Shown here one piece after another: positions 43 through 52,991 of a stretch of 64,000 nucleotides of DNA. The notes below the pieces were generated by a model that was not told the DNA's origin, did not search any database, and saw only the letters and a list, made by a program, of their open reading frames with translations. Each line of letters begins with the position of its first letter. Within the stretch, counting starts at the first letter, position 1. A program made the translations under genes and the position numbers. The stretch is from positions 1 to 64,000 of IMG/VR virus record IMGVR_UViG_3300028384_001500. One strand, written 5' to 3'.

Positions 43-71
43 ATAATACCGCATGTTTTCCAGTATTACAT
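43..71 (-). promoter_or_regulatory. Class I promoter-like motif ATGTAA-N17-TATTAT
   Basis: Minus strand reads ATGTAA, exactly 17 nt, TATTAT, preceded by an A-tract; the same spacing recurs at six other intergenic sites. Confidence 0.55.
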
Positions 72-78
72 TTTTTAT

Positions 79-1356: not shown

Positions 1357-1368
1357 TTAAATAAAAAA

Positions 1369-1440
1369 GATGTGATCGAGATCTTTCCTAACATCTCATA
1401 AAATAAAAGTGGGGACGAGGAGCGTATGCTCGATCACATC
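1369..1440. repeat. 12-bp perfect inverted repeat enclosing 48 nt
   Basis: gatgtgatcgag (1369-1380) and ctcgatcacatc (1429-1440), between tRNA genes. Confidence 0.7.
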
Positions 1441-1449
1441 AGAAAAAGC

Positions 1450-1552
1450 TGCGAGACTAGGGAGTCGAACCCTAAAAAGCCTAAGATAAATTGCAAACTC
1501 TATCTCAGCCCAGTTGATCCGATTTGTTTTACACCAAACTCAACTGTCTCGC
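1450..1552 (-). ncRNA. tRNA-like RNA with canonical acceptor/T-arm and two long non-canonical hairpins
   Basis: Acceptor GCGAGAC/GTCTCGC plus A discriminator; T-arm TAGGG-TTCGACT-CCCTA; D and anticodon arms replaced by AGTTGA..TCAACT and GGGCTGAGATAGA..TTTATCTTAGGCTT hairpins. Confidence 0.7.
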
Positions 1553-1557
1553 ATAAA

Positions 1558-1635: not shown

Positions 1636-1645
1636 ATAAAAAGAA

Positions 1646-1930
1646 TGTATCATGAGGGACTCGAACCCCCGACCCGCTGCTTAGCGCACCACTACAATTT
1701 TCATTGCCAATTTTCATTGTTTGTAGTCCGGACTATCCCTCAACCATAGAATTAATTATTCCTTAGGCCACTCCCGTCTAGTCTCTACACCTTCATAATT
1801 TCTTATGCTTGGCTCGGGATTGCCATTTTAAAGGTTTCCCCGAATTTGAGAGTGTATGCAATGTGATGTTTCCACCACAAGGCTCCTTTATCTTAAAGGC
1901 AGCTGCTCTATCCATCTGAGCTAATGATAC
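1646..1930 (-). tRNA. trnR: tRNA-Arg(UCU), intron-containing (exons 1896-1930 and 1646-1684)
   Basis: Joined exons give acceptor GTATCAT/ATGATAC, stem GCTGC/GCAGC, loop CTT+CTAA = CUUCUAA, and A20 (Arg identity element). Confidence 0.88.
1685..1895 (-). mobile_element. Group I intron, IC3/trnL-like, 211 nt, no ORF
   Basis: GAGCCTT..GGAAAC start, CAAATTCGGGGAAACC, GGCAATCCCGAGCCAA, GGTGTAGAGACTA, GATAGTCC; P3 CACTCTC/GGGAGTG, P4 TCGGG/CCCGA, P7 GACTA/TAGTC; terminal G; P1 exon CUU paired with GAG. Confidence 0.88.
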
Positions 1931-1970
1931 ATATAATTTATAGCAATTTTAAAGATCTTGTTATAAGAAT

Positions 1971-1999
1971 ATTATAACTAACATTTTTTAGTATTACAT
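1971..1999 (-). promoter_or_regulatory. Class I promoter-like motif ATGTAA-N17-TATAAT upstream of tRNA-Arg
   Basis: Exact 17-nt spacer, A-tract upstream, about 40 nt before the tRNA 5' end. Confidence 0.65.
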
Positions 2000-2017
2000 T
2001 TTTTTATTTTATAATAA

Positions 2018-2108
2018 CAAGGGCGTGAGTCTCTAGCATATCATTAGATGATTACTAGCACACATGGGAACTCATCGTTTAAGATTGCCTGCCTGAGCAA
2101 TCCCCTCG
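2018..2108 (-). ncRNA. Candidate structured RNA downstream of tRNA-Leu
   Basis: Closing stem CGAGGG/CCCTTG, hairpin GATTGC/GCAATC, stem TGAGT/ACTCA enclosing CTAG/CTAG and ATCAT/ATGAT. Confidence 0.35.
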
Positions 2109-2120
2109 TATTCTATAAAG

Positions 2121-2204
2121 TGCCTCGGGCGGGACTTGAACCCGCACTCCCTATCGGAAACAAGATTTTAAGTCTTGCGTGTCTACCAATTCCACCACCA
2201 AGGC
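2121..2204 (-). tRNA. trnL: tRNA-Leu(UAA), intron-less
   Basis: Acceptor GCCTTGG/CCGAGGC, loop CTTAAAA, long variable arm, T-loop TTCAAGT, A73. Confidence 0.95.
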
Positions 2205-21780: not shown

Positions 21781-22830
21781 TTACTTAATTCTTTTATAAT
21801 TTGATTTAAACCAATCTTTAAGAATATCTCGATCATCGATGCCTCTTCCTTCATTAAGAGTATTATCTTTTTCTATTTCATTTAGCCGATCGTTTTTTCT
21901 TTTTTGCCTTCTCAATTCAGATATTGTATTTTGAATTAGCGATGCTTCTTTCCTATATTGCTTTCCTTCTTTTTTTCTGGAGTTGTAAGAGCTTTTAATG
22001 TATTGTAACTCATCTATCATTTCTTGTAAGTAACGAGAATAGTCTGAGCTTCCTTTTTCTGCTCTTTTAATTTCATTTAAAGTAGGCATAGAAAGAATTT
22101 GAAAAACTGAGTGTTTTGTATTTTCGTCCATCCAACTAGGCAATCCTGACTTAAATGCCTCGACGTCACCCGTTTCTAAATACGCCCTCATTTTAGTACC
22201 GCTAATATCTATTGTTCCACCTTCTCCACCGCGAGTAAATCTATCTGGAAAATCGGCTCCCATAAAAGAAACTCCAGCTGGATTCATTGACCTAAGCGCA
22301 TCTGAGTATTTAGGTGGCGAAGATTTAAGTTCAACTGCCGGATCTTTCTTAGAAAACTTAGGCAACAAATAATACTGTTGTGTATCCTCAGGGTCTGAAT
22401 AGATGTAAAACATGTTGTTTGGTCGCGTACCAGTGTGCGCTAATTCGTTTGCTTCTTTTAGTAACGCAAGAACTTTACCAACAGGTCCTCCGCCGTATTC
22501 AATATGAATATTAGGAGAAACACTTTCGTAGTAGTCTTCAATATATGCAGTCCAGACTTGTTGCATTGATTCACCTTTAAGTGCACCTCTATCTCCAAGT
22601 CCTATAAAAAGAAGCACTCTACCATTCGGATCTTGTGCAGCATCGTTTATGGCGTGCATAATCATCTGGTCATGGCCGGCGTGGAAAGGTTTAGTACCAC
22701 CAGCAAAAATGTAATAGTTTTCACCAGGAACAACTTGAAAACCTTCATCTCGATAACCGACATACACTCCTCTCGCCATTTCATTAAGACTACCATACAT
22801 TATTTCGTATATGTTTGTTTTTCTTTTCAT
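21781..22830 (-). CDS. HxGH nucleotidylyltransferase (cytidylyltransferase-like)
   Basis: FAGGTKPFHAGH and ISGTKMR motifs; N-terminus ends in LNE. Confidence 0.75.
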   Translation of the reverse strand: MKRKTNIYEIMYGSLNEMARGVYVGYRDEGFQVVPGENYYIFAGGTKPFHAGHDQMIMHAINDAAQDPNGRVLLFIGLGDRGALKGESMQQVWTAYIEDYYESVSPNIHIEYGGGPVGKVLALLKEANELAHTGTRPNNMFYIYSDPEDTQQYYLLPKFSKKDPAVELKSSPPKYSDALRSMNPAGVSFMGADFPDRFTRGGEGGTIDISGTKMRAYLETGDVEAFKSGLPSWMDENTKHSVFQILSMPTLNEIKRAEKGSSDYSRYLQEMIDELQYIKSSYNSRKKEGKQYRKEASLIQNTISELRRQKRKNDRLNEIEKDNTLNEGRGIDDRDILKDWFKSNYKRIK

Positions 22831-36660: not shown

Positions 36661-36680
36661 CCACTAAGTTTCCAAAAAAG

Positions 36681-37040
36681 TGGACCGCAGCAGAATCGAA
36701 CTGCTGTCCGCAATAGTCTTGGTTCTAGTCATTCACAAGCTTAGTTATCTTTTTTCTCCTGATAACAGGGATAGTCACCTCTTTCCACCAACTCTAGGTA
36801 ACATTGAGTTCCCACCTCATACTACGAGGATAACCATTTTAGTCATGATATATCGCCTCGACTAACTGGCTAACCTCTTGTTTTTCACCGGAAGAGATAC
36901 CGGCGTTGATTAAGCAGCTAAAGCTACTGACTCAAAGTGTGCGTTATTGTTTGCAACTAAATTGTTTGAACTGTTAAGGTCGAGTCTCACCTGCTTGCAC
37001 TGTCTCCTTGATTCTATTCCGTCGAAGCCATTAGCGGCCC
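36681..37040 (-). ncRNA. ssrA: tmRNA, 360 nt; tag (A)ANNNAHFESVALAA encoded at 36910-36954
   Basis: 5' GGGCCGC..GGCTTCGAC; 3' AGCAG-TTCGATT-CTGCT-GCGGTCC-A; G3.U70 alanine determinant; tag ORF ends ALAA-stop. Confidence 0.93.
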
Positions 37041-52577: not shown

Positions 52578-52991
52578 TTAGTTAATAGTAATTTTTTTAG
52601 CTGCCGGTTTTTTACTTTCATATGTAGGTACAAGAATAGAAAGCACGCCTGATGTATAATCAGCATCGACGTTATCAATATCGACATTTTTAGGCAAAGA
52701 AAAAGATCGTTTAAATTTTGTTGTCTGAATATGCTCTTGATGAATATATTCTTTTCCTTCAAAATCTAACGTACCTTTAACTGTTAAAATATTATTTTCG
52801 ATGTTAATATCGAAGTTGTCACGTGAAAAGCCGGGTAAAAATAAATCAAAGACGTAAGAATTGTCTTGTTTGTAAATATTACATTTTGTATTGAAACTGT
52901 TAGCATGCGACTGCTTACCGCGGCTTTTTCCAATTCCAAAGTAATCATCATTAAAAAAATCATTTAAATAAGAATTATAAATTAGACTCAT
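52578..52991 (-). CDS. Hsp20/alpha-crystallin small heat-shock protein
   Basis: LPGF..DINIENNILTVKG, FKRSFSLP, ADYTSGVLSI. Confidence 0.9.
   Translation of the reverse strand: MSLIYNSYLNDFFNDDYFGIGKSRGKQSHANSFNTKCNIYKQDNSYVFDLFLPGFSRDNFDINIENNILTVKGTLDFEGKEYIHQEHIQTTKFKRSFSLPKNVDIDNVDADYTSGVLSILVPTYESKKPAAKKITIN

What the first reader, a model, noticed from the sequence alone, without database searches (positions are those of the whole stretch)
1646..1930. trnL-type group I intron sitting in tRNA-Arg(UCU), while the neighbouring tRNA-Leu(UAA) is intron-free
Seen: a compact 211-nt intron with intact P1-P9 pairings lies between anticodon positions 34 and 35. Established: this position and these core motifs typify the cyanobacterial/plastid trnL(UAA) IC3 intron, whose P1 needs exon CUU paired with GAG. 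tRNA-Arg(UCU) offers the same CUU context, whereas the bacterial Arg-tRNA introns I know of are in the CCU isoacceptor. Inference: the intron has moved between isoacceptors in a phage, and AGA decoding depends on splicing.
Basis: partly seen in the sequence, partly recalled or inferred. Interest (0 to 1): 0.7.

Follow-up and report, generated by a model that had tools for sequence, protein, structure and literature searches.

The report
Self-splicing intron in phage tRNA-Arg
A marine jumbo phage carries an arginine tRNA gene split in its anticodon by a compact, apparently intact self-splicing group I intron; this is real, but the same arrangement recurs in other phages and many bacteria, so it is a further member of a known class.

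Summary
On the minus strand, 1930-1646 is tRNA-Arg(UCU). It is split between U34 and C35 by a 211-nt group I intron (1895-1685). Rfam RF00028 scores it 55 bits against a cut-off of 50, and ARAGORN calls Arg(tct) with a 211-nt intron. Only one of the eight anticodon-loop positions gives U(-1), omega-G and a restored anticodon stem.

P1-P10 hold up across 32 relatives: 92% of cells are paired, against 30-43% when partners are slid. The guide sequence fits both exons.

The novelty claim fails. An Arg.3Ug class was catalogued in bacteria in 2020. I found the same split in 11 other viral contigs and about 35 bacterial species. About 33 more species carry an intron at a second site in tRNA-Arg(UCU).

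The trnL kinship is supported. The intron sits in a well-supported clade that mixes phage Leu(UAA) and Arg(UCU) hosts. One guide base tracks the host gene: G in 47 of 47 Arg introns, U in 76 of 77 Leu introns.

A jump inside this phage is not supported. Kin phages carry intron-less, non-orthologous tRNA-Arg genes. The 371-nt stretch holding the promoter-like motif and the split gene is present or absent between strains.

Splicing itself is untested.

The parts
1646..1930 (-). Complete split tRNA-Arg(UCU) gene
   Evidence: ARAGORN intron mode calls Arg(tct) i(37,211). The spliced product is a 74-nt cloverleaf with the Arg-type D-arm GCUCAGAUGGAUAGAGC and no encoded CCA.
1896..1930 (-). 5' exon, ending in CUU (U34 is the last base, at 1896)
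   Evidence: Boundary mapping. C-G, U-A and U.G with the guide GAG are invariant in all 32 aligned relatives.
1685..1895 (-). Group I intron, 211 nt, with no ORF; omega-G at 1685
   Evidence: RF00028 at 55 bits. The fold has z = -3.1. It departs from only 1 of 68 positions that are invariant in 31 relatives.
1646..1684 (-). 3' exon, starting CUAA (C35 at 1684)
   Evidence: It restores the anticodon stem GCUGC/GCAGC.
1883..1887 (-). Internal guide AG-GAG. GAG (1885-1883) pairs with exon CUU to form P1. AG (1887-1886) pairs with 3' exon CU (1684-1683) to form P10
   Evidence: the first P10 pair is U-A in 22 sequences and G-C in 9, and by eye in the A2 alignment U goes with Leu hosts and G with Arg hosts; the base 5' of GAG is G in 47/47 Arg-hosted and U in 76/77 Leu-hosted introns.
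1862..1879 (-). P2 hairpin, 7 bp, with a GAAA loop
   Evidence: All 7 pairs show compensatory changes (helix 3).
1769..1854 (-). P3 (1854-1848 with 1775-1769), enclosing P4 (1843-1838 with 1819-1814), P5 (1834-1823), P6 (1813-1811 with 1791-1789) and P6a (1807-1794, GAAA loop)
   Evidence: P3 has 7/7 pairs with compensatory change. P4, P5 and P6 are 99.5-100% paired. P5 has no abc extension.
1731..1783 (-). P7 (1783-1779 with 1735-1731), a pseudoknot around P8 (1767-1744). P8 carries CCUAAG...UAUGG, the 11-nt GAAA-tetraloop receptor motif
   Evidence: P7 is 100% paired. The P8 outer pairs are 100% paired. The receptor letters are near-invariant in alignment A2.
1688..1727 (-). P9 (ACUA/UGGU) with two inner GAAA hairpins, P9a and P9b
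   Evidence: helices 14-16: 99%, 75% and 98% paired, with compensatory changes. The MFE fold recovers all three.
1971..2003 (-). Promoter-like site AAAAATGTAAT-N16-TATAAT, 40 nt upstream of the split gene
   Evidence: 1 match against 0.01 expected. The core AAAATGTAAT occurs 5 times in the window against 0.95 expected. A consensus match only; function is inferred.
1643..2013 (-). Strain-variable module: promoter-like spacer plus split tRNA-Arg
   Evidence: X17 contig: flanks 1539-1642 and 2014-2070 match almost perfectly, and 75 other letters replace the 371 nt. Those letters begin as another tRNA's 3' end. X1 and X2 hold both forms. In the relative L213, homology ends at 2013 and an endonuclease-like ORF follows.
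2120..2204 (-). Neighbouring intron-free tRNA-Leu(UAA), given for context
   Evidence: It is 72/84 identical to the kin phage L215's Leu, so it is an ortholog.

Best explanation
This is a phage-encoded tRNA-Arg(UCU) gene interrupted between U34 and C35 by a 211-nt group I intron with no ORF. The intron has the compact tRNA-intron (IC3-like) architecture.

Proposed mechanism:
1. The precursor is probably transcribed from its own promoter-like site.
2. The intron folds into P1-P9.
3. Exon CUU pairs with the guide GAG. The U.G wobble there marks the 5' splice site.
4. A free guanosine attacks that site.
5. The guide's AG then holds the 3' exon's CU (P10), and omega-G (1685) occupies the G site for exon ligation.
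6. The product is a 74-nt tRNA with loop CUUCUAA. It reads AGA, the phage's main arginine codon.

Shown here: the gene, the boundaries, the helices and their covariation, the fit of the guide to both exons, and the codon bias.

Inferred: splicing itself, which I expect to be autocatalytic as in the Anabaena and Azoarcus tRNA introns (established knowledge, not tested here).

Evolution: the intron belongs to a phage-rich lineage that has switched between tRNA-Leu(UAA) and tRNA-Arg(UCU) several times. Both hosts offer CUU before the site, and the guide base that pairs with nt 35 differs with the host gene (U with Leu's A35, G with Arg's C35). In this phage the split gene most likely arrived whole, as an accessory tRNA module.
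For: - Identity and boundaries.
- Structure: 60 pairs, 92.1% of cells paired against 30-43% for slid partners; 40 pairs with compensatory change; 0 of 500 shuffles reach the observed values. The MFE fold recovers most helices, z = -3.1.
- Core conservation: 67 of 68 positions invariant in relatives are kept.
- Guide fits both exons: P1 is invariant, and the P10 base tracks the host gene in 123 of 124 introns.
- Use: AGA is 58% of Arg codons, 25 per 1000. The other two elongator tRNAs, Lys-UUU and Leu-UAA, also read the phage's most-used codons in their families.
- Selection for the function in the family: six kin loci carry intron-less tRNA-Arg(UCU) near the same gene.
- Real in nature: identical sequence in three runs from two studies.
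- Recurrence: 11 other viral contigs and about 35 bacterial species have the same split.
- Lineage and host switches.
- Acquired as a module.
Against: - No spliced RNA was seen. The four metatranscriptomes barely hold this phage, and tRNAs are rarely caught.
- One otherwise invariant base differs: A to G just 3' of P7, segment position 177. By eye, G occurs at that position in other tRNA-intron seeds.
- P1 is only 3-4 bp.
- The promoter is a consensus match only.
- The tree rests on about 226 MAFFT-aligned columns with several long branches and an unsettled bootstrap. It lacks cyanobacterial, plastid, fMet, Ile and Arg(CCU) reference introns.
- The host, and hence its own tRNA-Arg(UCU) supply, is unknown.
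Confidence: 0.85

Rival explanations
1. One reading: the intron recently jumped inside this phage from the neighbouring tRNA-Leu(UAA) into tRNA-Arg(UCU), leaving the Leu gene intron-free.
For: - Leu(UAA) and Arg(UCU) share the CUU context.
- Arg- and Leu-hosted introns interleave in the tree.
- One kin phage (L250) has a split Leu(UAA).
- L008-type phages hold split Arg, Leu and Lys genes side by side.
Against: - The window's Leu gene is an intron-free ortholog of the kin's Leu (86% identical).
- Its Arg exons are only about 75% identical to the kin's tRNA-Arg, with a different acceptor stem.
- The split gene plus its promoter-like spacer is an indel with sharp ends at 1642/1643 and 2013/2014.
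- L250's Leu intron is only 65% identical to this one.
- Introns that live together in L011 are 68-75% identical and are not sisters.
- The nearest relative, at 78-79%, is another phage's Arg intron.
Confidence: 0.05
2. The intron is a decayed, non-splicing relic and the tRNA-Arg gene is a pseudogene carried along passively.
For: - Splicing was not observed.
- There is one change at an otherwise invariant position.
- The module is dispensable, since strains lack it.
Against: - Every helix is intact.
- 67 of 68 invariant positions are kept.
- The guide fits both exons.
- The exons form a perfect cloverleaf with the Arg D-arm.
- The sequence is letter-identical in runs from two studies.
- The tRNA reads the phage's commonest Arg codon.
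Confidence: 0.07
3. The intron is more than a neutral passenger. For example, it delays or gates supply of the phage tRNA, or keeps the anticodon loop unformed until splicing so that host anticodon nucleases cannot cut the precursor.
For: - Phage tRNAs have been proposed to counter tRNA-targeting defences (title and abstract of PMC10264068).
- Split tRNAs recur in phage tRNA clusters: more than 120 Leu(UAA) contigs, and three split tRNAs in L008-type phages.
Against: - Nothing here tests this.
- Kin phages manage with intron-less tRNA-Arg.
- The mature tRNA would be as exposed as any other.
- A selfish element whose insertion is harmless explains the same pattern.
Confidence: 0.08

Closest known systems
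Arg.3Ug class of bacterial tRNA group I introns (Williams 2020, bioRxiv 10.1101/2020.01.27.920355; seed Rba190.Arg.3Ug)
   Same: The host is tRNA-Arg, the cut is after loop position 3 (CUU/C...), with U(-1), omega-G and guide GGAG. The P1-P9 layout, with two hairpins in P9, is the same. By eye, the seed matches the L057 Gemmobacter intron, which I mapped as Arg(UCU).
   Different: This one is in a phage. It does not fall in the main bacterial Arg site-3 clade (Desulfobulbales and Alphaproteobacteria). It falls with phage Leu and Arg introns. It is 71-78% identical to the other phage Arg introns.
tRNA-Leu(UAA) IC3 intron of cyanobacteria and plastids (Leu.3Ug), and its phage counterparts
   Same: Same site (34/35), same CUU/GAG P1, same compact core, and similar strings such as GAGCC...GGAAAC...AAAUUCGGGGAAACC. 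It is 75-80% identical to phage Leu introns and nests among them.
   Different: The host gene is Arg, not Leu. The guide base for nt 35 is G, not U. Cyanobacterial and plastid sequences themselves were not in my tree.
tRNA-Arg(CCU) intron of Agrobacterium and other Alphaproteobacteria (Arg.5Ug)
   Same: A group I intron in the anticodon loop of an arginine tRNA, with the same core family.
   Different: It sits 2 nt further on (after nt 36) and in another isoacceptor. The site-5 introns I found in Arg(UCU), mostly in Rhodothermales, form a separate clade (99/93) away from this intron. I could not fetch Arg(CCU) examples.
Azoarcus tRNA-Ile(CAU) intron (structural model of IC3)
   Same: About 200 nt, no P5abc, GAAA loops on P2 and P9, and a CCUAAG/UAUGG receptor motif. 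The docking pattern comes from established knowledge and was not tested here.
   Different: Different tRNA and a different site (after loop position 5). P9 here carries two extra small hairpins, as the Leu.3Ug seeds do.

Membership tests
Group I intron (Rfam RF00028) | Score at or above the curated gathering threshold | tested here: met
   55.0 bits against 50, full model 1-253.
Group I intron (Rfam RF00028) | Conserved P3-P8 core including the P3/P7 pseudoknot, supported by covariation | tested here: met
   92.1% of cells paired, 40 of 60 pairs compensatory, and both controls far lower. P7 is 100% paired.
Group I intron (Rfam RF00028) | U.G wobble closing P1 at the 5' splice site, and G as the last intron base | tested here: met
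   U1896 with G1885, which is U.G in 32 of 32 relatives. G1685 comes before the 3' exon.
Group I intron (Rfam RF00028) | Guanosine-initiated self-splicing | not testable with these tools
   No spliced joint in the RNA runs, which barely hold the phage.
IC3 subgroup (compact tRNA introns) | No P5abc extension; short P5 | tested here: met
   P5 is 2 bp plus an 8-nt loop. The absence of P5a-d in IC3 is stated in PMC11835236.
IC3 subgroup (compact tRNA introns) | Insertion in a tRNA anticodon loop, with the anticodon stem formed by the exons | tested here: met
   Site 34/35; stem GCUGC/GCAGC.
IC3 subgroup (compact tRNA introns) | Groups with accepted IC3 references (Anabaena Leu, Azoarcus Ile, Agrobacterium Arg-CCU) | tested here: inconclusive
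   No reference sequence could be fetched. I have only a by-eye match of layout and core strings to Williams' seeds.
Arg.3Ug class (Williams 2020) | tRNA-Arg split after loop position 3, with U(-1) and omega-G | tested here: met
   This is the only passing solution of the eight positions.
tRNA-Leu(UAA) intron family (Leu.3Ug) | The host gene is tRNA-Leu(UAA) | tested here: not met
   The host is tRNA-Arg(UCU).
tRNA-Leu(UAA) intron family (Leu.3Ug) | The guide base 5' of GAG is U, pairing with A35 of the 3' exon | tested here: not met
   It is G here, as in 47 of 47 Arg hosts. It is U in 76 of 77 Leu hosts.
tRNA-Leu(UAA) intron family (Leu.3Ug) | Common descent with Leu(UAA) introns | tested here: met
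   For phage Leu introns only: a clade of six at 100/97 and 98/95. A single clade of Arg-hosted introns is rejected at p = 0.004.

The most novel reading that the evidence does not exclude
Split tRNA genes, each with its own promoter-like site, may be exchangeable accessory cassettes in the tRNA clusters of marine jumbo phages. The anticodon-loop intron may be kept because it benefits the phage, for example by gating tRNA supply or hiding the anticodon loop from host anticodon nucleases, and not only because it is harmless. The guide base facing nt 35, which differs between Leu- and Arg-hosted introns, may be what lets one intron lineage colonise Leu(UAA), Arg(UCU) and perhaps Lys(UUU) genes across phages.
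Probability: 0.1. Interest if true: 0.6.

Novelty: new member of a known kind. Interest (0 to 1): 0.35.

Why it matters
It corrects a textbook-style impression. Group I introns in bacterial arginine tRNAs are not confined to the CCU isoacceptor. Phage group I introns are not confined to protein genes either: split tRNA-Leu(UAA) is common in viral contigs (more than 120, with the scan cut short), and split tRNA-Arg(UCU) recurs in several phage lineages.

The set assembled here is a natural experiment in how a ribozyme retargets. Arg-hosted and Leu-hosted introns sit in one lineage and differ consistently at one guide base. That makes the rules of P1/P10 recognition and of intron spread between tRNA genes directly testable.

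For annotation, standard tRNA finders miss this gene, so phage tRNA counts are underestimates.

Tried and rejected
- Rfam scan of the huge-phage loci L002 and L004 returned nothing at E <= 0.01. Yet ARAGORN and the alignment show a clear trnL intron in L002. I treated this as a quirk of that call, not as absence.
- An exact scan for this tRNA's exon 1 in viral contigs found no match.
- Two patterns meant to recover the 75-letter variant or other relatives in viral contigs found no match. The one metagenome scan gave a single relative, L213.
- Four metatranscriptomes showed no spliced joint of this gene. Their matches are mostly other organisms' tRNAs.
- The joint 1679->1896 in X1 (26-letter side, GTTCG between) would read CUUCGAA. 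That is another organism's intron-less Arg(UCG)-like tRNA, not an intron-less allele.
- 'Relatives' cannot be drawn for a virus record.
- A pattern for the classical Arg(CCU) site-5 introns found nothing in 401 genomes of the class of G001 (Haematobacter). It was probably too strict. The tree therefore has no classical references.
- ARAGORN's own splice points (calls such as 'Ser gct', 'SeC tca', 'Stop tta') were rejected in favour of the U(-1)/omega-G/stem rule.
- ARAGORN's 'Arg' call in L113 looked false and was dropped.
The chloroplast anticodon paper was not relevant.

Full report
**What is there.**
The window is the first 64 kb of a 236,652-bp IMG/VR virus record. It is linear, about 77% complete and 35% G+C. 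Genes run almost all on the minus strand and include a phage-type DNA ligase and helicases. The nearest cultured phages share at most 34% amino-acid identity on the helicase. Public runs that hold the region are marine, seawater and salt-marsh metagenomes.

The whole contig has four tRNA genes, all within 1283-2204 on the minus strand, and one tmRNA. The tRNAs are Leu(UAA), the split Arg(UCU), Met(CAU) and Lys(UUU).

**Checking the observation.**
Read on the minus strand, 1930-1896 is a tRNA 5' half that ends ...GCUGC-CUU. Positions 1895-1685 are 211 nt ending in G. Positions 1684-1646 begin CUAA-GCAGC and complete the cloverleaf.

Rfam's group I model matches 1906-1705 at 55 bits, above its cut-off of 50. 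It is the only match in the genome. ARAGORN in intron mode calls tRNA-Arg(tct) with a 211-nt intron, and the spliced sequence is called Arg(tct) without help.

I tested all eight possible cut points in the anticodon loop. I required a U before the 5' cut, a G before the 3' cut and a restored anticodon stem. Only the cut between nt 34 and 35 passes.

The neighbouring tRNA-Leu(UAA) is uninterrupted. Contigs from runs X1, X2 and X5, from two studies, match 1639-2013 without a single difference. The split gene is therefore not an assembly artefact.

**Structure.**
I aligned 32 precursors cut at the same site, using MAFFT without fitting to any structure. I then wrote P1-P10 on the window's sequence.

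- Of 60 pairs, 92.1% of cells are standard pairs, against 30-43% when the 3' partners are slid by 1-3 columns.
- 40 pairs show changes on both sides.
- No shuffle out of 500 reaches the observed values.
- P3, P2, P6a and P9b covary at nearly every pair.
- P4, P6 and P7 are almost invariant and fully paired.
- P5 is a stub with no abc extension.
- P2, P6a, P9a and P9b end in GAAA loops.
- P8 carries CCUAAG...UAUGG, the 11-nt tetraloop-receptor motif.
- A plain energy fold recovers most helices (z = -3.1).
- The window's intron departs from only 1 of 68 positions that are invariant in the other 31 sequences: A to G just 3' of P7. By eye, G at that place occurs in other tRNA-intron seeds.

**The guide fits both exons.**
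Exon CUU pairs with GAG (C-G, U-A, U.G) in all 32 sequences. The two bases 5' of GAG, here AG, can pair with the first two bases of the 3' exon, CU. That is P10.

Across every site-3 intron I mapped, the base next to GAG is G in 47 of 47 Arg(UCU) hosts, whose 3' exon starts with C. It is U in 76 of 77 Leu(UAA) hosts, whose 3' exon starts with A. This is the strongest sequence-level sign that the intron is fitted to splice at CUU^CUAA. It also shows how small the difference between a Leu-hosted and an Arg-hosted intron is at the guide.

**Is it rare?**
No. Williams (bioRxiv 2020) expanded the four classical tRNA-intron types to 21. The seed alignment includes Rba190.Arg.3Ug, an Arg tRNA cut after CUU. 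By eye, that seed matches the Gemmobacter intron L057, which I mapped as Arg(UCU).

One pattern (Arg-type D-arm, CUU, then the IC3 core string) gave these results:
- Viral contigs: 13 hits. Eleven are Arg(UCU) cut at the same site and collapse to three distinct intron sequences. One is cut two bases later, and one was unmapped.
- Bacterial species genomes: 72 hits. About 35 are Arg(UCU) at site 3 (Desulfobulbales, Desulfovibrionales, Paracoccaceae, Acetobacteraceae, Spirosomataceae, a Bacilli MAG). About 33 are Arg(UCU) at site 5, CUUCU^AA, mostly Rhodothermales.

GenBank phage records gave no Arg example. They did give trnL(UAA) introns in two huge phages of 735 and 595 kb.

**Kinship.**
I built a tree of 118 distinct introns of 300 nt or less (IQ-TREE, GTR+G). 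The window's intron falls in a clade of six with 100/97 support. The clade holds two phage Arg introns (L008-type at 78-79% identity, and L009-type), two phage Leu introns (L163, L173) and L063.

L063 is a 'Chitinophagaceae' MAG contig of 8.4 kb. It shares a phage gene with this genome, so it may itself be viral.

The clade returns at 98/95 in a second tree. Elsewhere, L010-type Arg introns sit among Leu introns (99/98), and three more Leu/Arg pairings are well supported. Forcing all Arg site-3 introns into one clade costs 115 log-likelihood units and is rejected (AU p = 0.004). The site-5 Arg introns form a separate clade.

So 'trnL-type' is fair with respect to phage Leu introns, and host switches between Leu(UAA) and Arg(UCU) happened repeatedly.

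Caveats: the columns are few, several branches are long, the bootstrap had not settled, and I could not add cyanobacterial, plastid, fMet, Ile or Arg(CCU) references.

**Did it move in this phage?**
The evidence says no. Using the adjacent ATPase gene I found 42 related loci, many from contigs of 200-290 kb.

- Six kin loci carry tRNA-Arg(UCU) near that gene, all without an intron. One (L250) has a split Leu(UAA) instead.
- The window's Leu gene is 72/84 identical to L215's and is an ortholog.
- The window's Arg exons are only 56/74 identical to the kin's, with a different acceptor stem (GUAUCAU against GCACCCG) and no encoded CCA.
- L250's Leu intron is only 65% identical to this one.
- The 371 nt from 1643 to 2013, which is the promoter-like spacer plus the split gene, behave as a unit:
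  - One metatranscriptome contig matches both flanks almost perfectly but has 75 other letters in between. Those letters begin as a different tRNA's 3' end.
  - Runs X1 and X2 hold both the module and a form that diverges at 1642/1643.
  - In the relative L213, homology ends at 2013, and a RAP/DUF559-type endonuclease-like ORF follows.

The split gene was most likely gained whole.

L008-type phages carry three split tRNAs side by side: Arg at site 3, Leu at site 3, and what maps best as Lys(UUU) at site 4. Their introns are only 68-75% identical to each other and are not sisters. The Leu one is sister to L250's. That also argues against recent within-genome jumps.

**Function.**
AGA is 58% of arginine codons in the phage's long ORFs, 25 per 1000. 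UUA is the commonest leucine codon (40%) and AAA is 77% of lysine codons. The three elongator tRNAs therefore match the phage's A-ending bias.

The spliced tRNA has the Arg-type D-arm with A20. C35 is supplied by the 3' exon, so a recognisable arginine anticodon exists only after splicing. (That A20 and C35 are arginine identity elements is established knowledge.)

The claim that AGA decoding depends on splicing is true only for the phage's own copy. The host is unknown and presumably has its own.

Splicing was not observed. The four RNA runs barely hold the phage.

**Verdict.**
This is a real and very probably functional self-splicing intron in a phage tRNA-Arg(UCU). It is a new member of a known kind. 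Its interest lies less in the single case than in the pattern around it: a phage-rich intron lineage whose Leu- and Arg-hosted members differ at one guide base, and split tRNA genes that behave as swappable modules.

Noticed in passing
window 1443-1557, minus strand: A 115-nt element between tRNA-Met and tRNA-Lys folds as a tRNA-like cloverleaf. It has a 7-bp acceptor (GCGAGAC/GUCUCGC), a normal T-arm (UAGGG-UUCGACU-CCCUA), an over-long D-arm and a roughly 10-bp 'anticodon' arm with loop UUUGCAA(U). Neither ARAGORN nor Rfam calls it. A relative at about 95% identity appears in RNA run X16.
   Followed up: partly
window 2014-2119, minus strand: A structured 106-nt element sits just downstream of tRNA-Leu. 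It is 97% identical in the relative L213, where the flanking genes are only about 84% identical. It is 79% identical in L216. There is no Rfam match. It ends exactly where the variable module begins.
   Followed up: partly
window 1367-1441: A perfect 12-bp inverted repeat (GATGTGATCGAG ... CTCGATCACATC) around a 51-nt spacer, followed by a T-run on the minus strand. It may terminate the unit upstream of tRNA-Lys. The terminator scan did not call it.
   Followed up: no
window 36680-37040, minus strand: A phage-encoded tmRNA (Rfam 79 bits) with tag peptide ANNNAHFESVALAA.
   Followed up: no
window 65-74, 1993-2002, 2278-2287, 52878-52887 (minus strand) and 22706-22715 (plus strand): The motif AAAATGTAAT occurs 5 times against 0.95 expected. 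By eye, the three copies near the tRNA cluster are each followed after about 16 nt by a TATAAT-like hexamer, and one also occurs at the end of L213. This looks like a phage promoter type.
   Followed up: partly
L213 4756-5379: In a close relative, the slot taken here by the split tRNA-Arg holds a 207-aa ORF with a cysteine-rich N-terminus and a RAP/DUF559 (PD-(D/E)xK-like) endonuclease domain. It is possibly a free-standing homing endonuclease.
   Followed up: partly
L008, L011, L017 (e.g. L011 3526-5058): One phage type (contigs up to 281 kb) has three split tRNAs in a row: Arg(UCU) at site 3 (205-nt intron), Leu(UAA) at site 3 (237 nt), and a third that maps best as Lys(UUU) cut at CUUU^UAA (198 nt).
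   Followed up: partly
L093-L212 (viral contigs): Split tRNA-Leu(UAA) with an IC3-type intron is common in viral contigs. I found no paper on this in the held library.
   Followed up: partly
L025-L091 (bacterial loci, mostly Rhodothermales) and L014 (viral): A second intron site in tRNA-Arg(UCU), CUUCU^AA, is the position of the classical Arg(CCU) intron. It occurs in about 33 species and forms its own clade.
   Followed up: partly
L004 (LR756511, 595-kb phage), about 570-950: A tRNA-Leu(UAA) 5' exon is followed by an intron that starts almost like this one (UAAGAAAGGAGCC). It runs on for several hundred bases with coding-like sequence, so it is probably an ORF-bearing intron. The 3' exon was not mapped.
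   Followed up: no
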